Shown: positions 13,065 through 38,709 of the stretch, in pieces
How the letters are laid out: each line of letters opens with the position of its first letter
How positions within the stretch are numbered: position 1 is the first letter of the stretch
IMG/VR virus record: IMGVR_UViG_3300017528_000567
Span: 124,001-188,000 of that record
Direction: 5' to 3' (one strand)
Length of the DNA stretch: 64,000 nt
Position numbers and translations under genes: made by a program
Notes under the pieces: model-generated
The model's input: only the letters and a program-made list of their open reading frames with translations
Databases searched by the model: none
Told to the model about the DNA's origin: nothing

Positions 13065-13973
13065 CTAAATCTTTCGCTTTGCTACAGTCCAATCTTTCAC
13101 GTGAGCGAGTACAGCAGCCACGTGCTTACAGACTCGGTTGACCATCGTCGGGTCGCGAATCACCGGCACCGAGGCAGTCCCCCTGGGCTTGCCATCCAAG
13201 TAATCCTCCCGCTTCGAATGGTGCTCCGGCCCCTGCCAACGCCACGCCGGGCACGAGCAAGTAAGGTCCAGGTCCATCTTGGTTAGCTTCGTGATGCGCG
13301 CATTCCTGACCCCCTTGATCTTGACGACCCGGTCCACGTTCCCGCAGTTCACAGCCAAGAGCCATCGCAGGTTCTTTGTGTCAGCTCGCTTGAGCTTCAC
13401 ACCACAGCGTCGCGAGCGCCATTTCACCCTAGGATTCAACCCGCTTACGATCGAGTCTAAGCGCAGAGCGATCTTGGTCCGCTTGGCCGCTTCGATCCGC
13501 CTGACAGGAGCGTGCTCCGCATCCCATCTGGCAAGCACGAACTCGGCTGACGCATTCACCGTATTCGGGATGTCGTCACGGTACGGGTATTTGGTCTTAG
13601 GGCCTTCCCATTCACCCTTACCCCACGCTCCAATCCCATCGTGCTTGTTCGCGTTCTCGTCTTTGAATTCGATCCGCTCGCGATGCGTCAGCTGATCATC
13701 AGCGTTATCCGTGCGATAGATGCTCTCATCATCGCCCTTGTCGAAGTCACGAATGTCCTTCTCATCTTTGTCATGGACAGACGTTCCGGGGATCTTGTTG
13801 TCGAGCGACAACCCCTTGCTCGCGGGCTCATCATCACCCGGCAACTTCGCGCCATTGGACGGCCCGCCGCCTGGCAATCCCGACTCACCAAGGCGCTCGC
13901 CTCCCTTGGGCAGAGCTGGATCGCCCTCACCATAAGCAGGCCTGGTCATCAACGGTTGCTTCAGATCGGGCAC
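13065..13973 (-). CDS. SWIM zinc-finger protein with acidic, disordered N-terminus
   Basis: LTCSCPAW...VCKHVAAVL matches the SWIM CxC...CxH signature. Confidence 0.75.
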   Translation of the reverse strand: MPDLKQPLMTRPAYGEGDPALPKGGERLGESGLPGGGPSNGAKLPGDDEPASKGLSLDNKIPGTSVHDKDEKDIRDFDKGDDESIYRTDNADDQLTHRERIEFKDENANKHDGIGAWGKGEWEGPKTKYPYRDDIPNTVNASAEFVLARWDAEHAPVRRIEAAKRTKIALRLDSIVSGLNPRVKWRSRRCGVKLKRADTKNLRWLLAVNCGNVDRVVKIKGVRNARITKLTKMDLDLTCSCPAWRWQGPEHHSKREDYLDGKPRGTASVPVIRDPTMVNRVCKHVAAVLAHVKDWTVAKRKI

Positions 13974-13978
13974 TCACT

Positions 13979-15379
13979 CTAGACCTTCCAGGGATCCGAG
14001 CCCCCGCTAGCCTTCTTGAACTTGTCCTTGTACTTATCGGTGTTAGATTCCCACTCCTTCGCCTCCTCATCGGACATGTTGTCTGTAGGATCAGCCGGTT
14101 TGCCTTCTTCGAACCGTGACTCCTTCTCATCCGACGCGGATTTGAATTTGTCCTCGTACTTATCGGTATTGGCTTTCCATGCTTTGGCATCCTCTTCGGA
14201 CATGTCTTTCGTAGGATCCGCGGGCTTGCCCTCTTCGAATCTTGACTCCTTCTCATCCGACGCGGACTTGAACTTGTCCTCGTACTTATCGGTGTTGGCT
14301 TTCCATGCTTTGGCATCCTCTTCGGACATGTCTTTCGTAGGATCCGCGGGCTTACCCTCTTCGAACCGTGACTCCTTCTCATCCGACGCCAGCACCATCG
14401 AATCCATCACATCGGGCTTCAGGTAACGCCGCGCGAGCCGGACGGCCTTGCTCATACGAATGGCTAGACCTGCCACATCGCTCGCGCCGATGCTGTCACA
14501 CATGAGTCCGATCTCCGAGACGATGCTTGCCAGCTGGTCGAATGCCTGACGCATCTGGCTCCCCGAGGTGCCTCGAATATAGGCAATACGAGCAGCATCG
14601 CGGATATAATCAAAGCCAAGGGACATGTTGTATGGTCCATCAACCCCGAGGTCCCCAGCGTCGGCGGTCTTGACCCCTGCCGCCGCCTTGACCTCAAGAC
14701 TGTCTCCCAACACACGCCGGAGAATGGCCGCGAGCATTAGACGGCTCGGACGCTTCTTTTCATTGCCGAGCCCATGAGCCAGCCGACGCAGCGTTACCGC
14801 CACTTCTTGATTGGATGACGCAGTACGAACCGCGTCCCCCTCAAGGGAAGCGATCAGCCGAGTCAAAGACTCCGTATCGACATGTCCCGTCTCTTCGATC
14901 TGAGCGGCGACCCGCTTCAACTGTACTGCAGCATCTTGAACTCTCATGCGTGACTCCGGTTGTGATGACTTTCGCTTGACACGACGCACTCGGACGTCTT
15001 TCAGAGCGTCCTCCAGCTGTTCGACTTTCTCAGGTCTGAGGTCGTCTTTGATCTCTTCGTAATCCCATCGCGCTACGGCCATCGCTGCCGCATCCAATGA
15101 CTTGGTCACGCGCATCAAGGTGTCTGGGATGGCATGCAACAGATGGCCCGCGACCTCGAAAAAGTGGTCGCGGTGCTCCGACTTCTCGATCAGTTCGTTA
15201 GCCTCATCGATGTAGTTCTTGAGCTGATTAGTTCTAAGCCGAGCATCGCCAAGTTCCTCAAGGAGGAAGACAGAGATCCCCGAGGCTGTCTTGGCTTGCT
15301 TCAAGCACCGATCGTCCAATGGAACACGCTCCCAGGTCGCAAATGGGTCACGTGAGCGTTCCCACAAAGAAAACATCAC
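13979..15379 (-). CDS. Probable internal head protein with 3 x 42-aa C-terminal repeats
   Basis: Lies in the head module; KTAS, RTAS and KSAS motifs; tandem repeat. Confidence 0.65.
   Translation of the reverse strand: MMFSLWERSRDPFATWERVPLDDRCLKQAKTASGISVFLLEELGDARLRTNQLKNYIDEANELIEKSEHRDHFFEVAGHLLHAIPDTLMRVTKSLDAAAMAVARWDYEEIKDDLRPEKVEQLEDALKDVRVRRVKRKSSQPESRMRVQDAAVQLKRVAAQIEETGHVDTESLTRLIASLEGDAVRTASSNQEVAVTLRRLAHGLGNEKKRPSRLMLAAILRRVLGDSLEVKAAAGVKTADAGDLGVDGPYNMSLGFDYIRDAARIAYIRGTSGSQMRQAFDQLASIVSEIGLMCDSIGASDVAGLAIRMSKAVRLARRYLKPDVMDSMVLASDEKESRFEEGKPADPTKDMSEEDAKAWKANTDKYEDKFKSASDEKESRFEEGKPADPTKDMSEEDAKAWKANTDKYEDKFKSASDEKESRFEEGKPADPTDNMSDEEAKEWESNTDKYKDKFKKASGGSDPWKV
14009..14386 (-). 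repeat. Tandem 126-bp coding repeat x3
   Basis: Anchor tccttctcatccgacgc at 14121, 14247 and 14373 (126-bp period); unit SDEKESRFEEGKPADPTKDMSEEDAKAWKANTDKYEDKFKSA. Confidence 0.95.
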
Positions 15380-15403: not shown

Positions 15404-16477
15404 TCAGGCGAAGGCCTGAGGGAACAGCGCGAGGATCTGCGATTTGATGACTTCTTCTTCCGCAGCAAACACGGCACGCAGAATGTCTAGCCGGTCCTCA
15501 AAATCAGCCTGCAGCCGCGCCAGCTTCTTCTTTGTCGGGGCCGCGAAGTCGTAGGACTCCGGGAAGTCCGGGCAAAGGGCCTTGGCGATCCTCAGACGCA
15601 CCGCCGCACTCATCGGCGGTATGGCCGCCTTGACGGTAGGCTTTTTCACGGCTTTTGCGGTCGGGACGTTCGTATTCGAGAACGTGATGCCATCCTCGAC
15701 GGTCTTTGAGGTGACCTCCCCCACACTGGCCACAACCTCCGCGTCGCCGCCATCCCAGGTCTCGATCCCGCCGCCCGTGGACCCCGTGACGGTCATGCCC
15801 TCGGACGTCGTCTTGGACCCCGACGCTGTCTTTATCTTGCCAACGGTCTTACCGGACCCCGAGCTCGCCACCGCCTGCACATAGCTGGCTTTGACGGCCT
15901 CCTTCTTGAGCAAGTAGGCCTCCCGCTCCACATCGCTCATGCGCTCCAGCATCTCCTCTACGGAGATGCCCTGGCCAGGAGTGATGCTCACGTGGTCGAG
16001 CGCGTTCAGGACCTCCCGGGCCTCAGCTATGTTCGTGGTCGAGACCGCTGGGGTCTTGAGCTTACGCACCGGGACGCCATCCGATCCGGCTTCAGAGGCC
16101 GTGCGGCGATTGGCTGCCTTCGTGTTGGAGGCGTGCTCGCTGTAGTTCATCACGATGCGCTCATCCTGCTCGACAGTGGCGATCATCGTTTTGGGCTGGT
16201 CTCGCTCTGTCGCAGAACGCACCTGGATCTTAGCTGCGAGCGGCCGTCCGTATGCCGGGTCGGTTGAGTCGTAGCTCTCAGTCAGCACAATCCACGCCGC
16301 AGAGAGAGCCCCGCGGAGCTGGGGAAAAGCATATTCCGCACCAGCGTACTTCACCGTAGAGCCGTCGAACTCGAGCTCCGTGCCGTTCTCGACCCGCACA
16401 TTGAAGTTCCCAAGTGCGAAGCTACGAGTGGCCGTGAAGGCCTGGAACTCCCCTGTCTTAAATCTGATTTGGTCCAT
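15404..16477 (-). CDS. Hypothetical head-module protein
   Basis: Start moved to ATG 16477 (GGAG upstream, MDQIRF); folded-looking ends with an RTAS/KTAS-containing linker. Confidence 0.7.
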   Translation of the reverse strand: MDQIRFKTGEFQAFTATRSFALGNFNVRVENGTELEFDGSTVKYAGAEYAFPQLRGALSAAWIVLTESYDSTDPAYGRPLAAKIQVRSATERDQPKTMIATVEQDERIVMNYSEHASNTKAANRRTASEAGSDGVPVRKLKTPAVSTTNIAEAREVLNALDHVSITPGQGISVEEMLERMSDVEREAYLLKKEAVKASYVQAVASSGSGKTVGKIKTASGSKTTSEGMTVTGSTGGGIETWDGGDAEVVASVGEVTSKTVEDGITFSNTNVPTAKAVKKPTVKAAIPPMSAAVRLRIAKALCPDFPESYDFAAPTKKKLARLQADFEDRLDILRAVFAAEEEVIKSQILALFPQAFA

Positions 16478-16565
16478 TATGATCTCCATCGAAGGGCGTG
16501 AACGATGCCCTCCCAATAGGAAAACCATAGGTAGACTATTTATGCGGCAGCTTCTGATCTGGCCA

Positions 16566-17183: not shown

Positions 17184-17192
17184 ACAGCGGCG

Positions 17193-18813: not shown

Positions 18814-19695
18814 TCAGACGCGGGTGATGACCACGCGGGTCAGACCACGCGGGTTGAACGCACCGATGCCCAAGTTCTCAAAACATGAGAAACCAATCGT
18901 ACGAGCCTTCGGATCGTCTGCCGAAAGGACGGTGATCTCGGTACGAACCGGGATACGACCGAACTGCTCGGGCTCGCAGCACACGTATGTGAAGCCAGCG
19001 GGCACGAGACGTGACGTGATGATCTGAGCTCCCCAGAGAACGGCCTGGAGACCTGTCTTGAGCAACGTGGCCTGGCTCTCAATGTCCAGGATGTCGCGAC
19101 CGAACTTACGAATGTCGGCATAGTCGACCGCGTTCATGTAGATGCGGGCGACACGTAGGTCGTGACGCTCAATCTCAGCAAACGCATCAGCCAAAACAGA
19201 CGGGCTGATCGGGGCGACAACCGGAACGTCCGGGTTCGTCTGGCCGGGCAGCGTGTCGAAACCAGAGACAGCGATGCTGTCCATGATCGCAAACGTACGC
19301 TCGTCTTCCGCGGCCTGAATCTGTGCCTTCGCAAGATCCTGAGCACGCTCGATCAGATCGAAGCGACGCTCCTTGATTTGCGTGAGCGGGATCTCCGGGT
19401 TCGAGGCAATCTCGAACAGCGGGAAGATCACGCGCCGTGGCTTCTGAATCGCAAGGATGTTCTCGCCCTCTTCGCCGACAACGAACGCCGTAACATCCGG
19501 GTCCTTGTCGTAGATTGGGAGAGCGCCATCAGGCAGCTGCTCGACCAGGAAGGTCTTACGACCTACAGCCGAATAGTCGCGACGCAGACGCAGGGGCTGC
19601 ACCATCGAAGCGGCGAGCTTCTGGCGGCCTGCAGCGGTCTTAATGTACTCACTAATGACCTGCTGCTTGAGTTGATTAGAAACTTGGTGTGCCAT
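18814..19695 (-). CDS. Major capsid protein, HK97-like fold (293 aa)
   Basis: Follows the protease, scaffold and decoration genes and precedes a strong terminator; HK97-like pattern (FEIASNPEIP..IKERRFDLIERAQ; LWGAQIITSRLVP; FENLGIGAFNPRG). Confidence 0.85.
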   Translation of the reverse strand: MAHQVSNQLKQQVISEYIKTAAGRQKLAASMVQPLRLRRDYSAVGRKTFLVEQLPDGALPIYDKDPDVTAFVVGEEGENILAIQKPRRVIFPLFEIASNPEIPLTQIKERRFDLIERAQDLAKAQIQAAEDERTFAIMDSIAVSGFDTLPGQTNPDVPVVAPISPSVLADAFAEIERHDLRVARIYMNAVDYADIRKFGRDILDIESQATLLKTGLQAVLWGAQIITSRLVPAGFTYVCCEPEQFGRIPVRTEITVLSADDPKARTIGFSCFENLGIGAFNPRGLTRVVITRV

Positions 19696-19733: not shown

Positions 19734-20360
19734 TCAGACCCGGAGGTCCAGGACTAGGAGTGAGGAGTTGGCGTCCGGAGCGACCTTGACGATACCAATC
19801 ACCGTGGCAACGCCAGGGGTGATGCTGTCCAGAGAGTCAGCGATGGTGTTCGTCAGCAGACCGTTGATCGAAGCATAGAGCTTGTCACCAACGGCATATG
19901 TGAGAGCAGCAAAACCGCCCGATTGCACCTTAGTCTCATAGATCGAAACGCCAACGCATGAGCCACTGCCGGTCACGTAAGGCGCACGACCTGATGCAAC
20001 ACCCGGCGTGTTCTCGAATGCGTTACCAAGCGCATCGTTCAAGAAGATCCCGAGAGGCAGGATGCCCGCAGCCACGCCACTGGCAGCCGCAGAGGCAGCC
20101 TTGGGGCCGCCGATATAGTTATTCCCGATGTCGCGGCGCGTGAAAGCCACCGATCCACCAAGAACGCCAACCTTAGTGATGCTGGCTAGAGTTGTAGACG
20201 TGGCGCCAATCGCGAGACCCCCGGGAGGATTAGCCTGTGTGAAACCATCCGGCGATAGCAGACCGACGCTGTTGCGGGTCACTACGTGGAACAGTTGAAC
20301 ACGACCAGACGTCTCACGGAAATCACCCGAGCTTTGGCCGCCGATTGCGAAAGTAGTCAT
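19734..20360 (-). CDS. Head decoration/cement protein
   Basis: Immediately upstream of the capsid gene; YAVGDKLYASINGLLT...IGIVKVAP pattern typical of cement proteins. Confidence 0.7.
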   Translation of the reverse strand: MTTFAIGGQSSGDFRETSGRVQLFHVVTRNSVGLLSPDGFTQANPPGGLAIGATSTTLASITKVGVLGGSVAFTRRDIGNNYIGGPKAASAAASGVAAGILPLGIFLNDALGNAFENTPGVASGRAPYVTGSGSCVGVSIYETKVQSGGFAALTYAVGDKLYASINGLLTNTIADSLDSITPGVATVIGIVKVAPDANSSLLVLDLRV

Positions 20361-20446: not shown

Positions 20447-21769
20447 TCACTTCAGGCCGAAGGCGTCACGGACATCCGGAGCCGACTGCCAGAGACTCGA
20501 CAACTTATCGACTACGGCGTTGTTACTAGCCGTCTTCGAAGTGCCGCCGCCTAGCTTGGACACGCCATCGCGGGGGCGGGTGCCAACGGTGCGAGTGCTC
20601 GCGGTACGACGCGAACCCTGCTTCTGTTGCGCCTGACCCTGGCCTTGACCCTGGTCCGACTCTTCTTCGTCGGCCTGCTCGTCCTGTGCGAACAGGGTGC
20701 GGAGGATCTCATCCTCGCCGGCAAGAACCACTTGATCCACGTCCATCGGCGCGGGCTCCATCTCGATATCGCCCTCTGCCATCGGGCCGCAAGACTCGTC
20801 CGCAAGCAGCTGCTCGAGCTCGTCATCATTGCCCACGGGGGCCTGTTGCTGTCCGAGGCCCTGCTGCTGGCCAAGACCTTGCTGCTGTCCGAGGCCCTGC
20901 TGCTGACCTACAGACTGTTGCTGTTGGCCCTGTTGCTGGCCTTGAGCCTGCTGAATCATCTGTTGCAGCTGCGACATCATCTGTTGCATCTGCGCTACCT
21001 GCTGCTGGTTCGCAGACTTGCTCGTGGGCCAGTTCTCATTGGACTTAGCGTTCTGATCGCCGCCATCGTCCTTCGACTGCTCCGAGCGCTTCTTCTTCGC
21101 CAAGAGTTTCCGAGCGGCAGCCTGCTTCTGCTGGCCGTCATCATCATCGTCGTCGTCGTCGTCGTCCTCGCCGCCCTGAGACTTCGCCTTCATCTTCTCG
21201 ATGTTCTCTTTGAACTGAGGGGGCACCTCACCGGCCTGCTTCTCCTGACCTTCGTCAGCATCGTCATCATCTTCGGCGAAGCCGTCATCATCATCGGCCT
21301 CCTCCTCGTCATCCGCCTCGGTCTGCTCAGCAGCCAACCGCTTGTGCGTATTGATGAGCTCCTGGTCCGGCACATACATGAGAGCGAACGCCTGGTCCTC
21401 GATTGCATCGATTCCCGCGACCTTGCCGCCCTTCAACATAAGCTTCGCAACCGCGACACAGAGCTCAGCCTTCTTCAGGCGAACTCGGTCAGAGGCAGTC
21501 TTCTCAGCGTGGTTAAACGTGTCTTTACGCATCTCCGGTAGTCCGATCTCATCGCGTGCAGTCTGGCCATCCGAGTACTCGGCTTCCCAAGTGTTGGGTG
21601 AATGAACATCTTCGGCGAAGTCAGACGGGTCGCCGATCACGTACTCGTCCATTCCAGGTTGAGGGTGATCTTGGTTCATCGAATAGATATCGCCCGCGAC
21701 TTCAGCTGCCTGCTTCTTGGCAGCCTGCCTCGCGATCTCTTGAAGATTCCAGGTTGAGCGTTCACGCAT
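20447..21769 (-). CDS. Capsid scaffolding protein
   Basis: Acidic, Gln-rich low-complexity protein between the protease and capsid genes; many KxA motifs. Confidence 0.7.
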   Translation of the reverse strand: MRERSTWNLQEIARQAAKKQAAEVAGDIYSMNQDHPQPGMDEYVIGDPSDFAEDVHSPNTWEAEYSDGQTARDEIGLPEMRKDTFNHAEKTASDRVRLKKAELCVAVAKLMLKGGKVAGIDAIEDQAFALMYVPDQELINTHKRLAAEQTEADDEEEADDDDGFAEDDDDADEGQEKQAGEVPPQFKENIEKMKAKSQGGEDDDDDDDDDDGQQKQAAARKLLAKKKRSEQSKDDGGDQNAKSNENWPTSKSANQQQVAQMQQMMSQLQQMIQQAQGQQQGQQQQSVGQQQGLGQQQGLGQQQGLGQQQAPVGNDDELEQLLADESCGPMAEGDIEMEPAPMDVDQVVLAGEDEILRTLFAQDEQADEEESDQGQGQGQAQQKQGSRRTASTRTVGTRPRDGVSKLGGGTSKTASNNAVVDKLSSLWQSAPDVRDAFGLK

Positions 21770-21817: not shown

Positions 21818-23383
21818 TCACGACCGACCTAAGGCGTAGAGTCTGCCCTTCTCAAGAAGCTTACTCGCCTCAGAGCCGGTCACTACCCGGCCAATTACCT
21901 GACGGCACGCCGCCAAGTAGGTCTCATCATCTTCATATGGAGCGGTACCGCCCACACTTAGTACCGTCCTATAAACTCTTGTTTCACCAGCCATTGACGA
22001 TTTCTTCGTCAAAACATCCAGCATGCGAGAAACCGCGAGGATCTCTCGGCCTGTTAGACCGGCTTGCCTCACTCGACGCCATCCACCATTCTTCTGGAGG
22101 ATCAGCCCTTGTAAGACCCGCTTGGCTTGAGCTTTTCCAACAAACGAAAGAACGATCCTAGCAATGCGGCGCCACTGAGGGTGCACTAGAGCCGAGCGGA
22201 TCAAGCTCTCATTCTGTTTGTTGTTGTCGACGACTTCACGAACCTCGTTCGGTCCGCCCTTGCTGATCTCTTCGCGAACATGCTCGATGGCCTTGTCCCG
22301 CAACGCAGTAGAGAGATCCTTGACCGCCTTGTTGATGGGGTCTTCATCTTCACCTCCGGGGGGAGCTGGCGCCGGTGCACCCTCCGCGGGAGCTTCCGCA
22401 GGAGCTTGACCCTGCTCGGGAGCGGCCTGCTCTGCGGGCGCTTGCTCTGCCGGTGCTTGTTGCTGTGCAGGGGCCTCTGTCTGCTGCTGTTGCCCTTGGC
22501 CAAACAGTGAGCGAGCGGCTTTCGCGACCCCTCCTGGGATCGGCGCCGGGGCGGCTTTCGAGAAAGCCATGTGGAGCTTGTTTTCAACCTGCGCGACTTC
22601 TTTGGCAGACAGCACCCCACGCAACACCGCACCCTTGAAGGCCGGGTTAGCTACCCACGAGGCCTCGATAAACCTAACCGACGTAGGGTCCGTGTGGTGC
22701 CCGCAGAGCTCGGCCACTTTTCGTGGGGTCGCCGATTCGTCCACGAACTGCTGACCCTTGAAATAGCGGATGCACGCACACAACTGCGTTTCGTCTTTGG
22801 CGACGTTGCCGCACTTCGTGCAGGTCGTTGAGCTCGTGGAGCAACCCATGGAGAGCGTCCCGAGCTGGCCAGACTTGATCGAGCGGATGAGCGCCGCGTG
22901 CTTCAAGTCGTTGGCGATCAGAATGTCGACGTAGACCGAATCCCCGATGTCACGAGCCGCCGCATCAATGATGCGTCCCTGAGAGAGCTCGGGGATCTGG
23001 ACGTGCTCGATGTACGACTGCGCCCCAACAAACGACTTGAACGATGACATGAGCAGCTTGCGCTCGAACGCATCGTTGTTGTTGTTGATAAACCGCTGCG
23101 TTGCGGGCGTGACGTAGTAGTCCTGAAAGGGCCGGTTAACCTCGAAGCCCTCGACAAAGTGACGTCCAACAGGGGCGCTCGCGTTGTCAACGTCAACGGA
23201 TGCGACGATCGTCGCGTGACTCAACATGTACCTGCTGGGGTCGTACTCCTGTAGGATGACCCGAGCGGTCCGCTTCTGAAAATCGAGCTCCGGCAAGATC
23301 GCTGTACGACGCAAAGCATCCCACTCGGCGAACTTGATTCCCGGCTTCTGGAGTTTTGCTTTAGCGAACTTGAGAAACGCCAA
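21818..23383 (-). CDS. Prohead (maturation) protease, HK97/assemblin-type, with Cys-rich insert
   Basis: YIEHVQ...GRIIDA (candidate His), GQLGTLSMGC (candidate Ser), RFIEASWVANPAF; CTKC..CAC insert; upstream of the scaffold. Confidence 0.8.
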   Translation of the reverse strand: MAFLKFAKAKLQKPGIKFAEWDALRRTAILPELDFQKRTARVILQEYDPSRYMLSHATIVASVDVDNASAPVGRHFVEGFEVNRPFQDYYVTPATQRFINNNNDAFERKLLMSSFKSFVGAQSYIEHVQIPELSQGRIIDAAARDIGDSVYVDILIANDLKHAALIRSIKSGQLGTLSMGCSTSSTTCTKCGNVAKDETQLCACIRYFKGQQFVDESATPRKVAELCGHHTDPTSVRFIEASWVANPAFKGAVLRGVLSAKEVAQVENKLHMAFSKAAPAPIPGGVAKAARSLFGQGQQQQTEAPAQQQAPAEQAPAEQAAPEQGQAPAEAPAEGAPAPAPPGGEDEDPINKAVKDLSTALRDKAIEHVREEISKGGPNEVREVVDNNKQNESLIRSALVHPQWRRIARIVLSFVGKAQAKRVLQGLILQKNGGWRRVRQAGLTGREILAVSRMLDVLTKKSSMAGETRVYRTVLSVGGTAPYEDDETYLAACRQVIGRVVTGSEASKLLEKGRLYALGRS

Positions 23384-23389: not shown

Positions 23390-24109
23390 TCACCATCCAA
23401 TCGGTTCACCCAGTGGCCCAACGAGTGCGTCGGACTTGAGCAAAAAGAGGTCTTTCGGGCACGCGAACAAACGGACGCGGGCGCCCTTGTCCATCTTGTA
23501 GGTTGTGCGACGCATCTCGGTCGCACACTTTGGGCAACGAGGCTTGCCGACCTCGACTTCACCTGTGGTGAGCCGATACTGGCGGTTCTGTGCAACCCAG
23601 TATGCTGCCGTCTTTGCAATGTGCTGCTTGATCCGCAGGTCCCGCAGCCGCTCCCCCAGTCGATAGAACTTCTGAACTTCGGCCCGTAGCCCGTCATCAT
23701 CCACGCCTTGAGCGGCGTATCGATGCCACGCGTCATCGTAAGCGGCCACCTCAGAAGAGCCCGACGCCCAGCTCTTAGCTAGGCTTGTGTAGAACCCACG
23801 CGGGAGCTTAGAGCCGGCCCATGGGCTCGTAGTCGCCCACTTCTTACGGGCCTTCTCGATATCGTAACTGCTGTAAGACTGGTCGAACTCAGGGGGCAAG
23901 AATTGCGCGACCGCTGGGTTGACCTTGACAACATCATCCGCGCTCACTCGTTCGTTGCCGTGAGGCCATTGAACGTCTAAGTAGCCAAGGCCGCGGTGGA
24001 CCGCCGTCACCCTACCAACGAAAGGCGACAATGCGATGGACGTCGGCACAAACCTATGCACGATGTCCCCTCGCTTGAAACCAGCCGCAAGTTTCCAGAG
24101 GTCTATCAT
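23390..24109 (-). CDS. Hypothetical protein with SH3-like N-terminus and C-terminal zinc ribbon
   Basis: FKRGDIVHRF..VGRV..DVQWP at the N-terminus; CPKC...LFAC at the C-terminus. Confidence 0.65.
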   Translation of the reverse strand: MIDLWKLAAGFKRGDIVHRFVPTSIALSPFVGRVTAVHRGLGYLDVQWPHGNERVSADDVVKVNPAVAQFLPPEFDQSYSSYDIEKARKKWATTSPWAGSKLPRGFYTSLAKSWASGSSEVAAYDDAWHRYAAQGVDDDGLRAEVQKFYRLGERLRDLRIKQHIAKTAAYWVAQNRQYRLTTGEVEVGKPRCPKCATEMRRTTYKMDKGARVRLFACPKDLFLLKSDALVGPLGEPIGW

Positions 24110-29318: not shown

Positions 29319-29740
29319 TCAGCACCACTTGCGTCCCCGTCCACCACTGCTTGGATGACGCCATCCGTGAGGTCTGAGTCTTCTCCATACATATTGAGCA
29401 GAGACTCCACTGGAGTGGAGGCCACGGGGGCCTGCTTGAGAGGTGGTTTGACAATAGATTCTGCAGCTGCGGGTTCAGGAGTTAGGCCCTTGAGAATCCT
29501 GGCCCCCACCGACGCTCGTTTAATCCCTTGCCCCGCCATGCCCGCAAACCGAGACCATGTCGTCGCGAACCGCATGTAAATAGCCGTGTTGTCGTTGGCC
29601 GGAGCTCGGCGCACCCGCTGGTAAAGGCTCTGAGAGAGGCCGTGGATACGTGCCACGCGAGACTGCAGCTCCTGATGGAGGGTATTGATCTCCGCGACAA
29701 TGGCAGCGGGCTCCATGCGATCGGGCGGAGTCAGATTCAT
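29315..29740 (-). CDS. Hypothetical protein upstream of the portal gene
   Basis: Start moved to ATG 29740, which overlaps the upstream stop (ATGA). Confidence 0.65.
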   Translation of the reverse strand: MNLTPPDRMEPAAIVAEINTLHQELQSRVARIHGLSQSLYQRVRRAPANDNTAIYMRFATTWSRFAGMAGQGIKRASVGARILKGLTPEPAAAESIVKPPLKQAPVASTPVESLLNMYGEDSDLTDGVIQAVVDGDASGAE

Positions 29741-30821: not shown

Positions 30822-30849
30822 CAGCCAGTCCTTTCCCCGGTGTCCATCA

Positions 30850-31368
30850 TCAGATGCTCACCTGTATTCCGAGGTGCCAATTGCGCTCTTCAATGGGTCT
30901 CTGTGTGACGAATGCAATGAAATAGCTATTAGGTCCCCTCGGGTCGCCCGAGAGGGTCCACTCGTCTTCCGTGGTAAAAAGGCCGGCCAAGCTAAAGACC
31001 AGCCGGTCACTTGCGTGATAGTCGATCGGCACAAGTGGCCCGCCGCCCGTGCGCGAGGCATAGGTGTACTTTTCGTAGTTCGCCGTGGAGATCGTCCAAC
31101 CGCCAGCACCAAGGACCACGAACTTGTAGGCCGGCTGGTTCCGGGTCATGGCCGTAAAATCGTCTGAAACCTCATCGGAGCCCCAGAGTGCGAAGCCCGC
31201 ATAGAGCCCGTCTGACTTCGTGACGATAAGCCGGTCTTCAGTAGTGTTAGCCCATTGGAAGCCTTGGCCGCCTTTCCACCCACTCACAGCGTCAGCCTCG
31301 GTCACGTCAACCGTTATGGTTGCCCCCTTGAAGAACGTGATCACGTCTCGAGTGCGAGGTATTTCCAT
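30850..31368 (-). CDS. Decoration-like paralogue 1
   Basis: GWKGGQG..AGFALWGSDE..YEKYT..LVFSLAGLFTTEDE. Confidence 0.7.
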   Translation of the reverse strand: MEIPRTRDVITFFKGATITVDVTEADAVSGWKGGQGFQWANTTEDRLIVTKSDGLYAGFALWGSDEVSDDFTAMTRNQPAYKFVVLGAGGWTISTANYEKYTYASRTGGGPLVPIDYHASDRLVFSLAGLFTTEDEWTLSGDPRGPNSYFIAFVTQRPIEERNWHLGIQVSI

Positions 31369-34388: not shown

Positions 34389-34802
34389 TCATTTTCCGAC
34401 GGCCCTACTGCCGCCCCCACCATCGGTCTCCACCAAATACTGACTGAGGTTGCTGACCGTGGCGTAACCCTTGTCTTTGGGGATCTGCTTTCGGAGCGCC
34501 GTCTCCATGTCCCGGTAGTCATCGCTTACACCTGGCCAACCCTTGTTCACCAGGTCGACGACATTCATATTCCTCGGCTTTGGCTGAAACACATCCTGGG
34601 GGCGCAAGTCTCGGCTGCTTGGGTCCACAGTATCAGGGCGTCTAAGGTCGGTCTTGACATAGTCCTTGATTGTGGTGCTAGACATGCCTTTGGCCTTGTT
34701 GATCGGCTTGACCAGGTCCTTGACCTCTTTCCGTATATTTGACTGTTGCGCTGCTTGCTTGAAGCGGGCCGCAACGCGCTTGGCTATGTGACGGGAGGTC
34801 AA
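34389..34802 (-). CDS. Small basic protein with N-terminal RVAARF tag
   Basis: Begins (TTG)TSRHIAKRVAARFKQAA. Confidence 0.7.
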   Translation of the reverse strand: MTSRHIAKRVAARFKQAAQQSNIRKEVKDLVKPINKAKGMSSTTIKDYVKTDLRRPDTVDPSSRDLRPQDVFQPKPRNMNVVDLVNKGWPGVSDDYRDMETALRKQIPKDKGYATVSNLSQYLVETDGGGGSRAVGK

Positions 34803-36796
34803 AGCTTCACCTCGCCTTGGCCAAACATGATCGTGACGTCCCGGGGAGTTTCAGTAGCTTTGACATCGATCACGATGTCGTTCTGCATCTGGAACTCATC
34901 CACCATCGAAGCCCCGTTGTTCACGAGCTCCGCGTAGGCGATTGACGTCGAGCTACCAGACGCCAGGACGGCGCGCTGCTGCGCCGTCTTGTCCATGTAG
35001 GGCGGCTCGCTGACCAGCGGCTTGTTGATTTTCGAGCAATGCCCAGTCTTCACCTGGTGCACACAGCTCATGCACTTCGAGCCGTACTTGAGGTAGGGCA
35101 CCCCGCGCGAGCCATGAAGGCGGCTCGCCTCATCGCAGCCCTTGCCGTAATCGTCATACACAGACGGGTCGACGTAGTAGATGCCCTGCAGCCCCTGCTC
35201 GGCGAAGACCTTCCGGAGCTCGGCCTTGGACGCCTTGATATCGCGAGGGTCGAATCGAGCCTTGAGAGCAGTGGCAAGGTCACTGCCGTACAGGCCCTCG
35301 TTCATGTACCGGGAGGCCTGCTTGATGATCTCCTTGCGCGCCACACCGCTTGTCGCGTACTCGGGGGTCCCGCCATAGAAGCCGGTCATCGCTCCGAGAC
35401 GCACGGGGGCACTTGCCGCCCACCCAGCGGAGACTCGAACAACTTGATGAATTGCCTTCAGCGCCTGACTTGGGGTGCTCCCCCAGCTCGCCGCAGTCCT
35501 TGTGCTCACATTCGGCAACCGACCAGCCGTGCGATGCTCCAGCAGGACGGCGTCGACCGTTTCCTGGGTGAGAATATCCGCGGCTTGTTTCACCAGCGGC
35601 TTGCCGTAGAGCAGGCAGCGGGTCTTGTTGTAGATGCACGACCCACACTTCGCGCCGGCCACGATTGCCCGGACCGTCGGGTTGTGCTTCGCCAGGAAAT
35701 CAGCGCCCTCGTGACAATCTTGGAAGCTGGCCTGCTTCGAGTAGATCACGCCGTAGAGGCCCGATTCTTTGAGAACGGGCGCCCAATGAGGGCTCGTGCG
35801 AACCAGCAGACTTTCGTCGAATGCCAGCCTGAGAGAAGAAGCGAGCTCAGCGTGCGAGAGGCCCTTCACCATCTCACGGTGGAGAAAATCGAGCACGGGC
35901 TTGGCTTCAACTGCCAACTGCTCCTGAGCCCGCTTGCCCTTCAAGAGCGACGTGGCCTCGATCAACTGCTCACGCGCTTGCACCGGGGTTGGCAGCGCCG
36001 GCTTGTGCTGGCTGATGCCCTGTCCGGCGTATGCCCCGGATCGTTCGGGCCGCGGGGCCAGGTAAGCCGCCCTGATGCGCTCTTTGGCAGAGACCGCACC
36101 CGAGGCCTGGATGATGCGACCACGGGCCGCCTGAGACTGCTCAACGGCGCTCGCGAGCTTGTCCGTGTACGGCACCTCAGTGACGAGCTCGCGCCCGAAC
36201 TGGCTGCAATGCCCAGCGCCACCTGGCTGCGCCGTGTGGCAATGTGGGCATCCGCCGCACGCGGTCTTCGAGAGAACGTACCGAGCGGTGGGGGCGTGCT
36301 TGTTGATGAACGAGCTGGCCTTTGCCGGGTCGAGCCCGGCGAAGTCTTCCGCCACAACGTAGTAGCGGCCCACAAGCCCGCGCTCCTGCAGCACCGAGGC
36401 CAACACCGTACGGTGCTCCTGCAGGGTCTCCGCTGGGTAGCGGCGTCGGAGCTCGCTGCGCATCCGCCCGAGGTCATCTGACTGCAGCAGAGCCAGGCGC
36501 GCGATCTTGGCAATCTCTTCGGCCCTCGAGCGAAGCTTGCCGTGCGCCTGAGACATATCACCCATCGTATGGGGATCGTTGATCCCAACATTGGGCACCG
36601 GCACCACGTTCGGGACCAAGAATGCCGTGGCCGACTCACCCTGACGGTCCCACAGAGCTTCCAGGTCCGGTCCGATGTTGAGGTTCTGCTTAGGCAACAC
36701 CGCTTCCGCGCGATACTTCTCTTCATCAACGTCAAGCCAGTCGAGATCGGCAACCGACGCATCTTTCAGAAAATCACTTAGGTCTAGTTCAGCCAT
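34799..36796 (-). CDS. Head-module protein with three Cys-rich repeated modules
   Basis: CGGC..C, CGSC..C and CMSC..C, each followed by (E/P)LV and preceded by GLxGxxY. Confidence 0.75.
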   Translation of the reverse strand: MAELDLSDFLKDASVADLDWLDVDEEKYRAEAVLPKQNLNIGPDLEALWDRQGESATAFLVPNVVPVPNVGINDPHTMGDMSQAHGKLRSRAEEIAKIARLALLQSDDLGRMRSELRRRYPAETLQEHRTVLASVLQERGLVGRYYVVAEDFAGLDPAKASSFINKHAPTARYVLSKTACGGCPHCHTAQPGGAGHCSQFGRELVTEVPYTDKLASAVEQSQAARGRIIQASGAVSAKERIRAAYLAPRPERSGAYAGQGISQHKPALPTPVQAREQLIEATSLLKGKRAQEQLAVEAKPVLDFLHREMVKGLSHAELASSLRLAFDESLLVRTSPHWAPVLKESGLYGVIYSKQASFQDCHEGADFLAKHNPTVRAIVAGAKCGSCIYNKTRCLLYGKPLVKQAADILTQETVDAVLLEHRTAGRLPNVSTRTAASWGSTPSQALKAIHQVVRVSAGWAASAPVRLGAMTGFYGGTPEYATSGVARKEIIKQASRYMNEGLYGSDLATALKARFDPRDIKASKAELRKVFAEQGLQGIYYVDPSVYDDYGKGCDEASRLHGSRGVPYLKYGSKCMSCVHQVKTGHCSKINKPLVSEPPYMDKTAQQRAVLASGSSTSIAYAELVNNGASMVDEFQMQNDIVIDVKATETPRDVTIMFGQGEVKL

Positions 36797-38709
36797 TACC
36801 GCTCTCCGTCCTTCTGATTGATGTATGGCCCCTCATCGTCCCGTTGGTACAAGGGATCCGGACGCATATTGCGGGTTGAATGGTCCCACTTCACGTAAGG
36901 TTGATTCTGCTCGTGCCGGTAACCAAGGCCAGGTTGAACATCCATTGAATGGTCGTACGAGGCATCAGCCTCCGAAGGCAGCTCAGAGTCTGCAAACATG
37001 TGCTCGCGATAATGCGCGGGCCGCGGTGTTACAGGTCTAGGTTGACCTGGAAAAGCCTGGTCCGGCATCTTGGAGGAACCGACGTTGCTCGGTCCCACAT
37101 TCACCGGATTCGAGCCCTTGTCGCCGCTCCGGTAATAGTCAGATCTGGCAACAGGAGGCTGACCATCGTTAGGCAAATGCGACTGGCCTCTATGCGCTTG
37201 CCGGTTGCTCCGGCCCATCTCCATCTCGATAGACGGCGTTGTGTCGCTTTCATCATCGTGCAGCTTGCCGCCCGGATCGCTCGGCAACTTGGACGATGGT
37301 CCAAAGACGCCCTTTCCATCAGGGTCCTTTTCACCGTAGCCGCCCGCCCCTTGGCCATGAGCATCATCGCCGTCGCCGTACCCGATACCAAAATCCCAAC
37401 CTTCTGTTGGCGTGTTGTCGGTATAACGGCCTGGCATCCTGGAGTCGGCGCTCTTCAACAGGCCCCGCTGATCCATCAGCATGAAACCGTCGAGGTCCTT
37501 TTTCGTAAGCTTGTACTTCCGCGCACCGTGGGTGTTCAGGATCTGAGCTGGCGGTCGCCCCTTCTTGAGCAAATCCACGATGCCCCGAATCGTGTTCATG
37601 TCCGGGGCATCCACGTTCATTCGCGGGTCGTAGTCGTAGTCAGTAAGCGATGGCCAGGCCGCTGACTTGTCTGGCAGCGCATTCTCCCACTCAGACTCGT
37701 AAAGGTAGTCCTTCCCAGCCCCGTCCTCCCTGCTCCACTCATCCTTCATGGACGGCGGTTCATCCTGGTTGTAGGAGCCGAATGGACCCGTTTGGTCGGT
37801 ATCTGCGCGGTCCATGTGCTGGACTCGAGGCCCGCCCGACATGGTTTCCACAGGGATCGAGGAATTCGCGAACCGCTTCGCGATACGTGCGATCATGGGG
37901 TCAACCCAGGATGCGGTCTTTACCTTGGCAGACTCGCTGTCAGGCATGTCCCGCGCGTCGGGGACCCCAGCCCCTTCTTCATCCTCGTCTTCTTCATCCT
38001 CGTCTTCATCATCCTCATCGTCATCCTTCTTTTTCATGGAGGGTGGCGGAGGTGGAGGGTGAAAGCGCTGGTCGGACTCGGGGTTATTGACTTCACCCTC
38101 TTCTAGCTCGGCTTGCTCGCCCGATTCCTCCGCCTTGTTCAAACCATCCTCTACGAAGGATTCATCTTCGGGGTTCTCTAAGACGCGCTCGGCGTCCCCA
38201 ACCAAGCGCTCGACACCCTCGACGTCTTGGCTTTCGAGCTCGCCCAACTTTGGGCGCCAGTGCGGTGCGTGGAGCTCATCGTGGATCGTGTCCGAAACAG
38301 ATGAGATGGCCTCGCACGCATCGTGCAGCGCGCCACGAACATCCTTGACTGACATCACATAGCCCCGCCCGCCAATGAGCCCATCGGGAGAGATGGTCGC
38401 CGACTTCAACTTCGTAAACTCTCGGTGCGCCGACATCGCATGCCCGAGCGAGATACTCAGCGTCCATAGCATCCGAGCCAGTGGCTTCAGGGCTTGGGGG
38501 TCGTAGTCGAAATCTTTCGGGATGGCCCGCCGCATCGTGGTCGAGGGACCGCTCGACGCCCTATCCGGACGCTCCGGTTGCGCTGCCACACCTGCGGGCT
38601 CAACGTCATCCTCCAGCCCAGCCAGTCGCATCTGGTGCTTGAGGTTCATTCGTTCGGACGCACGCACGTGGCGCCGTAGAGCCGCTATGGTCTTCTTGCG
38701 AGATTCCAC
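36796..38709 (-). CDS. Acidic, largely disordered probable internal head protein (637 aa)
   Basis: D/E/G/P-rich; KTAS, KSAA and KSAD motifs; RIAKRF tag. Confidence 0.7.
   Translation of the reverse strand: MESRKKTIAALRRHVRASERMNLKHQMRLAGLEDDVEPAGVAAQPERPDRASSGPSTTMRRAIPKDFDYDPQALKPLARMLWTLSISLGHAMSAHREFTKLKSATISPDGLIGGRGYVMSVKDVRGALHDACEAISSVSDTIHDELHAPHWRPKLGELESQDVEGVERLVGDAERVLENPEDESFVEDGLNKAEESGEQAELEEGEVNNPESDQRFHPPPPPPSMKKKDDDEDDEDEDEEDEDEEGAGVPDARDMPDSESAKVKTASWVDPMIARIAKRFANSSIPVETMSGGPRVQHMDRADTDQTGPFGSYNQDEPPSMKDEWSREDGAGKDYLYESEWENALPDKSAAWPSLTDYDYDPRMNVDAPDMNTIRGIVDLLKKGRPPAQILNTHGARKYKLTKKDLDGFMLMDQRGLLKSADSRMPGRYTDNTPTEGWDFGIGYGDGDDAHGQGAGGYGEKDPDGKGVFGPSSKLPSDPGGKLHDDESDTTPSIEMEMGRSNRQAHRGQSHLPNDGQPPVARSDYYRSGDKGSNPVNVGPSNVGSSKMPDQAFPGQPRPVTPRPAHYREHMFADSELPSEADASYDHSMDVQPGLGYRHEQNQPYVKWDHSTRNMRPDPLYQRDDEGPYINQKDGER

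What the first reader, a model, noticed from the sequence alone, without database searches (positions are those of the whole stretch)
13065..38709. Pervasive K/R-x-A|S(A,G) motifs: a candidate assemblin-like processing code for the head module
Seen: the motif recurs in the scaffold (KQAA, KTAS, RLAA, KQAG, KQAA, KSAN, RTAS, KTAS), the capsid N-terminus (KTAA, KLAAS), 13979 (KTAS, RTAS, KTAD, KSAS twice, KKAS), 15404 (RTAS, KTAS), 23390 (KLAA, KTAA), 34799 (RTAAS, KQAS) and 36796 (KTAS, KSAA, KSAD). Established: HK97-type prohead proteases share the herpesvirus assemblin fold, and assemblin cleaves V/L-x-A|S. Inference: the protease at 21818..23383 cuts after K/R-x-A, fragmenting the scaffold and turning several large ORFs into polyproteins.
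Basis: partly seen in the sequence, partly recalled or inferred. Interest (0 to 1): 0.78.

Follow-up and report, generated by a model that had tools for sequence, protein, structure and literature searches.

The report
Predicted head-protease cutting motif, soil megaphage
A short motif (Lys/Arg-x-Ala followed by Ser/Ala/Gly, core K/R-T-A-S) is strongly over-represented and conserved in the head-assembly proteins of this giant soil phage and its relatives, and is most likely the cutting signal of the phage's capsid-maturation protease, although no cleavage has yet been measured.

Summary
After correcting for composition, [KR]-x-A-[SAG] is enriched in the head module (57 observed, 26.9 expected; narrower [KR][TQS]A[SAG] 27 vs 4.3). 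It is not enriched in the replication module (20 vs 21) or in the rest of the 255 kb genome (158 vs 149). The reversed motif is not enriched.

- 54 divergent scaffold orthologues carry 349 sites against 66 expected.
- In the cultured relative Tunturi_5, the three most enriched ORFs genome-wide are the annotated ejection protein, gp348 and the scaffold-position gene.
- Two sites in 36796-38709 are kept in 12-13 of 15 orthologues although flanking identity is about 0.2.

The gene at 21818-23383 has a modelled N-terminal domain closest to the T4 gp21 prohead protease (Z 11.7), then to herpesvirus proteases (Z 5-7). It has an invariant His127 and Ser178.

Best reading: a new predicted specificity, K/R-(T/Q/x)-A↓S/A/G, for a gp21-fold prohead protease that fragments the scaffold and trims head proteins. 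Cleavage, the scissile bond and the "polyprotein" claim remain untested. P3 is basic, not hydrophobic as in assemblin.

The parts
21818..23383 (-). Prohead (capsid maturation) protease, 521 aa: catalytic domain residues 1-290, Q/A/P-rich linker, C-terminal domain
   Evidence: phrog_18299 'head maturation protease' E 9.6e-10. Lies between portal and scaffold, syntenic with LR745208, Tunturi_5 gp331 and phage G gp19.
22514..23383 (-). Protease catalytic domain (residues 1-290)
   Evidence: AlphaFold2 model with mean pLDDT 85.2. VIA-align Z 11.7 to T4 gp21 (5JBL, 145 of 165 residues), and Z 5-7 to herpesvirus proteases. H56, H127 and S178 invariant in 82 homologues.
22778..22852 (-). Putative nucleophile Ser178 in 'LSMGC', followed by a Cys cluster (C181, C188, C191, C202) resembling a zinc ribbon
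   Evidence: Invariant or nearly invariant columns in alignments A1 and A3. Inteins in orthologues are inserted at this motif.
23261..23272 (-). RTAR (residues 38-41) in a lower-confidence linker before the protease core: candidate N-terminal self-processing site
   Evidence: [KRQ]-x-A-[SAGRK]-like element at this position in most of 82 homologues. pLDDT 64-67 here. Inference only.
22511..22522 (-). KAAR (residues 288-291) at the end of the catalytic domain: candidate C-terminal self-processing site
   Evidence: A289 and A290 nearly invariant in alignment A2. [KR]-[AV]-A is the commonest form in 82 homologues, followed by a variable linker. Inference only.
20447..21769 (-). Scaffold protein (440 aa, acidic and Q-rich low complexity) with 10 motif sites
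   Evidence: Lies between protease and decoration/capsid genes. 9 [KR].A[SAG] sites vs 1.1 expected, z 7.7. Orthologues carry 349 vs 66.
21491..21502 (-). Scaffold KTAS (residues 90-93), conserved site before a conserved helix
   Evidence: Motif at this alignment column in 44 of 54 orthologues. Also aligned in LR745208 (KQAS) and Tunturi_5 gp332 (KQAA).
21413..21424 (-). Scaffold KVAG (residues 116-119)
   Evidence: Motif in 37 of 54 orthologues, mostly [KR]TAS followed by E..IEDQ.
20597..20608 (-). Scaffold RTAS (residues 388-391) at the start of the conserved RTASTRTVGTRP block
   Evidence: Motif in 51 of 54 orthologues.
20525..20536 (-). Scaffold KTAS (residues 412-415), about 25 residues from the C-terminus
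   Evidence: A K-[TV]-A-S also lies 19-28 residues from the C-terminus in LR745208 and Tunturi_5 gp332.
21704..21730 (-). Scaffold N-terminal sites RQAA and KQAA (residues 14-22)
   Evidence: 29 of 54 orthologues at the first column.
21008..21340 (-). Scaffold central sites RLAA (144), KQAG (177), KQAA (215), KSAN (251), which bracket the acidic runs
   Evidence: RLA is part of a conserved helix-like block and may be structural.
19609..19641 (-). Capsid protein N-terminal KTAA (19-22) and KLAA (26-29): possible maturation sites
   Evidence: Present throughout the family and in Tunturi_5 (KSAA, KLAA), but replaced by ETEE and ALAQ in phage G. The whole protein is at least 89% conserved, so conservation here is uninformative.
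36796..38709 (-). 637-aa unknown protein, candidate substrate: RLAG (28-31; 38617-38628) and KTAS (264-267; 37909-37920, just after an acidic run)
   Evidence: Sites kept in 12 of 15 and 13 of 15 orthologues with flank identity 0.17 and 0.21. Orthogroup carries 1.47 narrow motifs per protein vs 0.19 expected.
34799..36796 (-). 665-aa Cys-rich unknown protein, candidate substrate: KQAS (354), RTAG (422), RTAA (433), KQAS (492)
   Evidence: Orthogroup carries 3.06 narrow motifs per protein vs 0.37 expected. Sites at 422 and 492 kept in 13 and 12 of 17 orthologues. The LR745208 homologue has 11 vs 1.9.
13979..15379 (-). 466-aa unknown protein, candidate substrate: KTAS (30), RTAS (185), and three tandem 42-aa repeats each ending K-[SK]-A-S
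   Evidence: 8 vs 2.2 expected, z 4.3. Site 185 kept in 16 of 23 orthologues at flank identity 0.30.
15404..16528 (-). 374-aa unknown protein with RTAS (142) and KTAS (233) in low-complexity linkers
   Evidence: Orthogroup carries 0.78 [KR]TA[SA] per protein vs 0.074 expected, but positions do not align.
38711..39013 (-). 100-aa protein with KVAS (residues 48-51; 38861-38872)
   Evidence: Kept in 11 of 13 orthologues.
23390..24109 (-). 239-aa protein next to the protease: KLAA (6), RYAA (130), KTAA (166)
   Evidence: Orthogroup carries 2.97 vs 0.68 expected. Site 166 kept in 33 of 38 orthologues but flanks are also conserved (0.67).

Best explanation
The window is the head and replication region of an uncultivated soil megaphage related to LR745208, Tunturiibacter phage Tunturi_5 and, more distantly, Bacillus phage G.

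Proposed mechanism: the gene at 21818-23383 encodes a serine prohead protease with the T4 gp21 / assemblin fold. The putative nucleophile is Ser178 and the putative general base is His127. Inside the procapsid it recognises K/R at P3, preferably T or Q at P2, Ala at P1 and a small residue (S, then A, then G) at P1'. It would then:
- cut the scaffold (20447-21769) at about ten sites, giving fragments small enough to leave the shell;
- remove short N-terminal propeptides, or cut at a few internal sites, in several co-packaged proteins (36796-38709, 34799-36796, 13979-15379, 15404-16528, perhaps 38711-39013 and the capsid protein);
- possibly free its own catalytic domain at [KR]-x-A sites at residues 38-41 and 288-291.

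Shown: the motif's enrichment, its specificity to the head module, its conservation across divergent orthologues, and the protease fold with its conserved residues.

Inferred: that the motif is a cleavage site, that this protease is the enzyme, and that the cut is after Ala.
For: (1) Head module 57 vs 26.9, and 27 vs 4.3 for the narrow motif. Replication module 20 vs 21. Rest of genome 158 vs 149. Reversed motif not enriched.

(2) 54 non-identical scaffold orthologues (about 50-60% identical to the window's scaffold, usually only over the N-terminal ~150 residues): 349 vs 66 forward, 72 vs 64 reversed. Relaxing one position at a time recovers K/R (5.6-6.9x), T (7.9x), A (5.9x) and S (6.6x).

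(3) Recurrent sites at fixed alignment columns, in 44, 37 and 51 of 54 orthologues.

(4) Sites in 36796-38709 kept in 12-13 of 15 orthologues with about 20% flank identity.

(5) Independent genome Tunturi_5. Of 311 ORFs the most enriched are gp328 'DNA ejection protein' (14 vs 3.3, P 1e-5), gp348 (three KTAS in its first 75 residues) and the scaffold-position gene gp332. An ADP-ribosyltransferase and a DarB-like protein also rank among the eight most enriched ORFs. From established knowledge, their T4 (Alt) and P1 (DarB) counterparts are head-packaged. In the 31 kb around the capsid gene, the tail fibre and most other tail genes have no site (sheath 3 vs 1.9).

(6) Motif within the first 35 residues in 10 of 23 head-module proteins (expected 2.45, P 0.002) against 3 of 21 replication proteins. 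This is the layout of T4/phiKZ propeptides.

(7) Protease model with pLDDT 85, Z 11.7 to T4 gp21, and invariant H127 and S178. Inteins in orthologues sit in exactly these conserved motifs.

(8) The Glu-based codes of T4 and phiKZ are absent from the scaffolds, so a different specificity is needed. The P3-x-P1 spacing matches the [LI]-x-E and [SAG]-x-E rules of gp21-type enzymes.
Against: - There is no proteomic or biochemical evidence of cleavage for any member of this clade. The literature searches and the papers they led to gave none. The phage G capsid paper could not be read.
As a single-residue pattern in this genome alone it is not significant after multiple testing.
- The 54 scaffolds are related, so conserved sites are counted repeatedly.
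- Some conserved hits (RLA in the scaffold, R-[LVI]-A-x in the C-terminal helices of 24172-27516, RTASTRTVGTRP) may be structural or binding elements.
- The 1114-aa protein next to the protease is not enriched (9 vs 7.1).
- The phage G protein at the scaffold position, gp21, has no [KR].A[SAG] at all.
- A protease-peptide co-fold gave no answer.
- TerL and a few replication proteins also carry sites, so the motif alone does not define substrates.
Confidence: 0.6

Rival explanations
1. The motif is a binding or targeting element rather than a scissile site. It could be a short linear motif by which scaffold and internal proteins dock onto the capsid protein, portal or protease (a capsid-targeting signal), with cleavage, if any, occurring elsewhere.
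For: The best conserved copy sits in a 12-residue invariant block, RTASTRTVGTRP, near the scaffold C-terminus, the usual capsid-binding end. N-terminal placement in many head proteins also fits a targeting sequence.
Against: About ten copies are spread through one scaffold, many inside fast-evolving low-complexity linkers. Small residues are required at the fourth position. T4 capsid-targeting sequences themselves end in the protease site, so the two readings are not exclusive.
Confidence: 0.15
2. The motif is a cleavage signal, but either the bond cut or the enzyme differs from the proposal. The cut could follow the K/R (HK97-like K|S) or the Ser, or a host or second phage protease could be responsible.
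For: Sequence alone cannot place the scissile bond. HK97-type enzymes are known to cut after Lys (from memory). The candidate self-processing sites have R, not a small residue, after the Ala.
Against: K-S dipeptides are depleted, not enriched, in scaffolds (36 vs 70). Ala and Ser are as strongly selected as K/R. The enrichment follows the head module that encodes the protease.
Confidence: 0.1
3. There is no dedicated function. The pattern is a by-product of composition, helix-forming Lys/Ala-rich segments, internal repeats and shared ancestry.
For: LR745208's K/A/E-rich scaffold also scores high for other K/A orderings. Tail-module hits come from paralogous repeats 'QYVLGA.LRK[ST]A[SA]GG'. Three hits in 13979-15379 come from tandem repeats.
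Against: The reversed motif, with identical composition, is not enriched, even under 12-residue block shuffles. Sites persist where flanks have diverged to about 20% identity. The signal replicates in Tunturi_5 proteins without detectable homology to the window's proteins.
Confidence: 0.07
4. The motif is a phosphorylation site (basophilic kinase consensus R/K-x-x-S) that regulates assembly.
For: K/R lies three residues before Ser in the core KTAS/RTAS.
Against: Ala and Gly substitute freely for Ser at that position (34% and 19% of scaffold sites). Ala at -1 is as constrained as Ser. No kinase was noticed in the module.
Confidence: 0.03

Closest known systems
T4 gp21 prohead protease and its L/I-x-E↓ code (scaffold gp22, internal proteins, Alt, capsid protein gp23)
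   Same: It is the closest solved fold (Z 11.7). The gene sits beside the scaffold and capsid genes. There are many sites in the scaffold, N-terminal sites in co-packaged proteins, and P3 and P1 are the discriminating positions.
   Different: There is no detectable sequence similarity (hhalign probability 0.5%; no Pfam S77 hit). P1 is Ala, not Glu, and P3 is basic, not aliphatic. Glu codes are not enriched. This protease also has a Cys4 insertion after the putative catalytic Ser and a 230-residue C-terminal extension.
phiKZ gp175 / SPN3US gp245 proteases of giant phages (S/A/G-x-E↓, A-x-E↓; PMC10052503)
   Same: Giant-phage setting, with a simple tripeptide rule that marks propeptides of many head-internal and ejection proteins. 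A sequence logo can predict further substrates.
   Different: Different residues at P3 and P1. The phiKZ and SPN3US rules were mapped by mass spectrometry, whereas this one is only predicted.
Herpesvirus assemblin (peptidase S21), cleaving (V/L/I)-x-A↓S at the M and R sites
   Same: Same fold superfamily (Z 5-7 to VZV, PRV, HSV and HCMV proteases). Ala-Ser occupies the presumed P1-P1'. The scaffold is the main substrate. Self-processing sites are possible.
   Different: P3 is K/R, not hydrophobic. [VLI].A[SAG] is not enriched. There are about ten sites per scaffold rather than two. Structural similarity is much weaker than to T4 gp21. A Ser-His-His triad has not been verified.
HK97 gp4 (peptidase S78) type prohead proteases
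   Same: Same general role and fold class (from the literature).
   Different: No Pfam or PHROG match to S78-type families. HK97-like phages have no separate scaffold gene (the delta domain is fused to the capsid protein), whereas this phage has a separate scaffold.

Membership tests
Prohead/capsid-maturation serine protease (T4 gp21 - HK97 gp4 - assemblin fold) | The characteristic protease fold | tested here: met
   AF2 model pLDDT 85.2. VIA-align Z 11.7, rmsd 3.0 Å, 145 of 165 residues of 5JBL. Foldseek probability 0.99.
Prohead/capsid-maturation serine protease (T4 gp21 - HK97 gp4 - assemblin fold) | Conserved catalytic Ser and His | tested here: inconclusive
   H127 ('VEH.Q') and S178 ('LSMGC') are invariant in 82 homologues, as is H56. 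Their superposition on T4 gp21's catalytic residues was not examined because no residue-level structural alignment was available.
Prohead/capsid-maturation serine protease (T4 gp21 - HK97 gp4 - assemblin fold) | Gene placed between portal and scaffold/capsid genes | tested here: met
   Order is portal 27543-29318, two ORFs, protease, scaffold, decoration, capsid. This is syntenic in LR745208, Tunturi_5 and phage G.
Prohead/capsid-maturation serine protease (T4 gp21 - HK97 gp4 - assemblin fold) | Sequence membership in a curated family (Pfam S77/S78/S21) | tested here: not met
   No Pfam hit at E<=0.01. No PDB sequence hit. Only phrog_18299 'head maturation protease' E 9.6e-10 and phrog_2774.
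Assemblin-type specificity (V/L/I)-x-A↓S | Ala at P1 and Ser at P1' | tested here: inconclusive
   A and S are the selected residues at motif positions 3 and 4 (5.9x and 6.6x), but the scissile bond is unknown.
Assemblin-type specificity (V/L/I)-x-A↓S | Hydrophobic P3 | tested here: not met
   [VLI].A[SAG] is 40 vs 36.2 in the head module. P3 is K (6.9x) or R (5.6x).
T4/phiKZ-type cleavage code | Glu at P1 ([LI]-x-E or [SAG]-x-E) enriched in the scaffold | tested here: not met
   In 54 scaffolds, [LI].E is 86 vs 141 and [SAG].E is 444 vs 450.
T4/phiKZ-type cleavage code | Many sites in the scaffold plus N-terminal sites in co-packaged proteins, absent from non-virion proteins | tested here: met
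T4/phiKZ-type cleavage code | Mature termini mapped experimentally at the motif | not testable with these tools
   No virion proteomics for this clade was found.

The most novel reading that the evidence does not exclude
A very large, mostly uncultivated clade of soil megaphages shares this protease and capsid gene (1015 to 1348 protease homologues, depending on the database, and 581 capsid-gene loci in public data). The clade uses a gp21-fold prohead protease whose specificity has shifted from Glu to Ala at P1, with Lys/Arg at P3, converging on the Ala↓Ser bond cut by herpesvirus assemblin. If so, the motif works as a readable tag for the whole packaged and ejected proteome, including Alt-like ADP-ribosyltransferases and DarB-like anti-restriction proteins. 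Head-internal proteins of uncultivated megaphages could then be predicted from sequence alone.
Probability: 0.4. Interest if true: 0.65.

Novelty: new variant of a known kind. Interest (0 to 1): 0.55.

Why it matters
Prohead-protease cutting rules are known for only a few phage groups (T4, the phiKZ/SPN3US group, HK97-like phages). There they have been the key to identifying scaffold turnover, propeptides and the proteins injected with the DNA.

A rule for the phage G / Tunturi_5 / soil megaphage lineage would allow three things:
- mature capsid and internal proteins to be predicted directly from metagenomes;
- candidate ejected effectors to be flagged among hundreds of unknown ORFs;
- a natural specificity switch (Glu to Ala at P1) to be studied within one protease fold shared with herpesviruses.

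Tunturi_5 is in culture, so the prediction can be tested at once.

Tried and rejected
- Close DNA search against deposited phages: no match.
- Pfam on 20 head-module proteins: nothing useful.
- PDB sequence searches with the protease and with its profile: only chance hits.
- First AF2 run with 21 sequences: unusable (pLDDT 46.5). It was rescued with an 82-sequence alignment.
- hhalign of the protease profile against T4 gp21: not significant.
- Complex prediction of the protease domain with scaffold residues 376-440: no answer (score 0.00). It counts neither for nor against binding.
- Literature: no cleavage data for phage G, Tunturi_5 or related megaphages. The phage G capsid paper is not held.
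- De novo tetrapeptide and tripeptide enrichment in this genome alone: KTAS is 8 vs 1.4 and K.AS is 13 vs 3.6, both swamped by low-complexity patterns and not significant after correction.
- Phage G: the scaffold-position protein gp21 has no [KR].A[SAG], and no alternative motif emerged from four proteins. Whether specificity co-varies with the protease lineage therefore stays open.
- Homologues with annotation for 34799-36796 and 36796-38709: none beyond LR745208.
- Tail-module enrichment (21 vs 11.8): set aside because the hits come from paralogous repeats.
Full report
**What the window is.** All long ORFs lie on the minus strand. The window is bases 124001-188000 of a 255 kb IMG/VR virus record estimated 54% complete.

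The capsid protein (18814-19695) matches these phages:
- 85% identical to the 485 kb uncultured phage LR745208.1
- 48% to the cultured jumbo phage Tunturiibacter phage Tunturi_5
- 39% to gp27 of Bacillus phage G
- about 27% to cluster-C-type mycobacteriophage capsid proteins

PHROGs identify these genes:
- TerL at 31647-33734
- portal at 27543-29318
- a head maturation protease at 21818-23383
- the capsid protein

By position and synteny with LR745208, Tunturi_5 and phage G, 20447-21769 is the scaffold and 19734-20360 the decoration protein. From 39955 to the end of the window lies a replication module. It encodes a sigma factor, clamp loader, primase, clamp, SbcCD, UvsX, helicase, NAD ligase and RNR.

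| Protein set | [KR].A[SAG] observed vs expected | Narrower motifs |
|---|---|---|
| Head module 13065-38709 | 57 vs 26.9 (z 6.2) | [KR][TQS]A[SAG] 27 vs 4.3 (z 11); [KR]TA[SA] 11 vs 0.9 |
| Head module without scaffold | 48 vs 26 | [KR][TQS]A[SAG] 20 vs 4.1 |
| Replication module | 20 vs 21 | [KR][TQS]A[SAG] 6 vs 3.2 |
| 193 proteins outside the window | 158 vs 149 | |

Expectations come from 1000 within-protein shuffles.
- The reversed motif, which has the same composition, is not enriched (21 vs 27).
- The assemblin-style [VLI].A[SAG] is not enriched either (40 vs 36).
- Shuffling only within 12-residue blocks, which preserves local composition, changes nothing.

Two cautions apply:
- The motif classes were chosen after looking. 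As single-residue patterns found de novo in this genome, they do not survive multiple testing: KTAS 8 vs 1.4 and K.AS 13 vs 3.6.
- Some hits are not independent: the tandem repeats in 13979-15379, and the paralogous 'QYVLGA.LRK[ST]A[SA]GG' repeats in the tail-fibre-like proteins.

The capsid gene retrieved 581 related IMG/VR loci, and the best 80 were fetched with flanks. The capsid protein is at least 89% conserved. The neighbouring scaffold is only about 50-60% identical, usually over just the N-terminal ~150 residues.

In 54 non-identical full-length scaffolds the forward motif occurs 349 times against 66 expected. Every scaffold has 4-11 copies. The reversed motif occurs 72 times against 64.

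Sites recur at fixed alignment columns:
- KTA[SA] at window residue 90, in 44 of 54
- [KR]TAS before 'E..IEDQ' at residue 116, in 37 of 54
- RTAS opening the invariant RTASTRTVGTRP at residue 388, in 51 of 54

Relaxing one position at a time recovers K (6.9x) or R (5.6x), T (7.9x), A (5.9x) and S (6.6x). The core is therefore [K/R]-T-A-S, with looser K-Q-A-[AG] variants.

The scaffolds of LR745208 (11 vs 3.0) and Tunturi_5 gp332 (9 vs 2.3) are also enriched. Both have sites aligned with the window's residue 90 site and a K-[TV]-A-S near the C-terminus.

Other orthogroups are enriched too:

| Orthogroup | Narrow motifs per protein vs expected |
|---|---|
| 34799-36796 | 3.06 vs 0.37 |
| 36796-38709 | 1.47 vs 0.19 |
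| 13979-15379 | 1.0 vs 0.085 |
| 15404-16528 | 0.78 vs 0.074 |

The first two rows count [KR][TQS]A[SAG]. The last two count the stricter [KR]TA[SA].

The most telling case is 36796-38709. Its sites at residues 28 and 264 are retained in 12 and 13 of 15 orthologues, as KTAA, RQAG, KQAS, KEAS or KLAS. The 20 flanking residues are only 17-21% identical. The second site directly follows an acidic low-complexity run, as propeptide boundaries often do.

**An independent genome.** I assembled the cultured phage Tunturi_5 from its GenBank record and scanned all 311 ORFs.

The three most enriched ORFs are:
- gp328, annotated 'DNA ejection protein' (14 vs 3.3, P 1e-5)
- gp348 (12 vs 3.5, with three exact KTAS in its first 75 residues)
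- gp332, at the scaffold position

An ADP-ribosyltransferase (gp205) and a DarB-like antirestriction protein (gp350) also rank among the eight most enriched ORFs. From established knowledge, T4 Alt and P1 DarB are head-packaged, ejected proteins, and Alt is processed by gp21. The motif thus picks out the proteins one would expect to meet a prohead protease.

In the 31 kb around the capsid gene, the tail fibre and most other tail genes have no site. That includes proteins of 1293 and 1381 residues. The sheath has 3 against 1.9 expected.

Back in the window, 10 of 23 head-module proteins carry the motif within their first 35 residues (expected 2.45, P 0.002). Only 3 of 21 replication proteins do. 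This is the layout of propeptides and capsid-targeting sequences in T4 and phiKZ-like phages.

**The enzyme.**
- The 521-aa product of 21818-23383 has no Pfam or PDB sequence match.
- It belongs to a large metagenomic family: 1015 homologues in one database and 1348 cluster representatives in another.
- An AlphaFold2 model of residues 1-290 built on 82 homologues reached pLDDT 85.2.
- Foldseek ranks T4 gp21 (5JBL) first, followed by herpesvirus proteases.
- VIA-align gives Z 11.7 to gp21 over 145 of its 165 residues, well clear of the next hits: VZV, PRV, HSV and HCMV proteases at Z 5-7, and MCE-domain proteins at similar Z.
- H56, H127 and S178 ('LSMGC') are invariant. A Cys cluster (C181, C188, C191, C202) follows the serine.
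- In several orthologues, inteins with Hint and LAGLIDADG domains are inserted near the invariant N100-N102 motif, at S178/C181 and near residue 224. Inteins are known to home to functionally critical sites.
- The domain is flanked by conserved [KR]-x-A elements at residues 38-41 (RTAR) and 288-291 (KAAR), before a Q/A/P-rich linker. These could be self-processing sites, as in gp21, but that is inference.

**Mechanism proposed.** The protease is co-assembled into the procapsid and cuts after Ala in [K/R]-x-A↓[S/A/G]. In the window's scaffold the P1 alanines are at residues 16, 21, 92, 118, 146, 179, 217, 253, 390 and 414. Cutting there gives fragments of 5-137 residues.

Placing the cut after Ala rests on three things:
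- the analogy with the P3-x-P1 rules of gp21-type enzymes ([LI]-x-E, [SAG]-x-E; PMC10052503)
- the requirement for a small residue at the next position ([KR].A followed by a residue other than S, A or G is 84 vs 82 in the head module)
- the A↓S bond of assemblin

The Glu-based codes themselves are absent: [LI].E is 86 vs 141 and [SAG].E is 444 vs 450 in the scaffolds.

**What remains open.**
- Nothing here shows cleavage.
- The capsid N-terminal sites (KTAA, KLAA) are conserved, but so is the whole protein. Phage G has ETEE and ALAQ at those positions.
- The phage G protein at the scaffold position lacks the motif, so the rule may be restricted to the Tunturi_5/LR745208/window branch.
- The large protein 24172-27516 beside the protease is not enriched (9 vs 7.1). 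Its conserved R-[LVI]-A-x hits look like helix features.
- 'Polyprotein' is not the right word. The evidence points to scaffold fragmentation, propeptide removal and limited internal cuts.

**Comparison and novelty.** In kind this is the familiar prohead-protease cleavage code of T4 and phiKZ-like phages. The predicted residues (basic P3, Ala P1, small P1') are new to my knowledge. I found no report of a cleavage motif for phage G, Tunturi_5 or related megaphages. The likeness to assemblin is real at the level of fold class and the Ala-Ser pair, but it fails at P3. I rate it a new variant of a known kind. It is of moderate interest, and directly testable because Tunturi_5 is in culture.

Noticed in passing
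L019:5237-7999, L023:3678-7955, L042:4737-7841 (orthologues of window 21818-23383): Protease orthologues of 920-1425 aa carry one or more inteins (Hint, Intein_splicing and LAGLIDADG domains). They are inserted near the NNN motif (about residue 100), at the Ser178/Cys181 motif and near residue 224. Many 900-1900-aa database homologues show the same split matches.
   Followed up: partly
window 22778-22852 (-): A Cys cluster (C181, C188, C191, C202) resembling a zinc ribbon sits directly after the putative catalytic Ser of the protease. That seems unusual for a prohead protease. One database homologue was auto-named 'ribosomal protein L37E', perhaps because of it.
   Followed up: no
window 21818-22510 (-): The protease has a 230-residue C-terminal extension: a Q/A/P-rich linker plus a conserved basic domain. 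Tunturi_5 gp331 (287 aa) and phage G gp19 (300 aa) lack it. It may be a procapsid-targeting or scaffold-like domain.
   Followed up: no
window 14006-14392 (-): Three tandem copies of a 42-residue unit (SDEKESRFEEGKPADPTKDMSEEDAKAWKANTDKYEDKFKSA) lie at the C-terminus of the 466-aa protein. Each copy ends in K-[SK]-A-S.
   Followed up: partly
window 29737-31368 (-): Three tandem paralogous genes (189, 171 and 172 aa; 35-42% identical to a single LR745208 ORF) lie between TerL and the portal.
   Followed up: no
window 2-6522 (-) and 10700-12610 (-): Ala-rich proteins with little Lys/Arg (1510 aa, running beyond the window's first base; 1071 aa; 636 aa) carry internal repeats such as 'QYVLGA.LRK[ST]A[SA]GG[ST]VE.GT' and 'DR[TV]ASG[VL]RTA[SA]'. 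The 636-aa one has a weak 'minor tail protein' match. These repeats account for the apparent motif excess outside the head module.
   Followed up: partly
window 18814-19695 (-) against 20447-21769 (-): Evolutionary rates contrast sharply. The capsid protein is at least 89% identical across the 80 best of 581 IMG/VR loci. The adjacent scaffold is only about 50-60% identical, usually over just the N-terminal ~150 residues, while keeping its motif sites. The scaffold also carries a poly-Asp run and (GLGQQQ)n repeats.
   Followed up: partly
Tunturi_5 (PP885688.1) 302926-304518, gp348: This hypothetical protein has three exact KTAS within its first 75 residues and 12 motif sites in all. It is a strong candidate for a multiply processed head protein in a cultured phage.
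   Followed up: partly
window 12607-13092 and 13065-13973 (-): As called (longest ORFs from the first start codon), the two ORFs overlap by 28 bases.
   Followed up: no
G000 record: IMG/VR labels the 255 kb record 'provirus'. The 64 kb window, however, is uninterrupted phage head, tail and replication genes on one strand, and the relatives are 300-530 kb lytic-type jumbo phages. The label may be an artefact.
   Followed up: no
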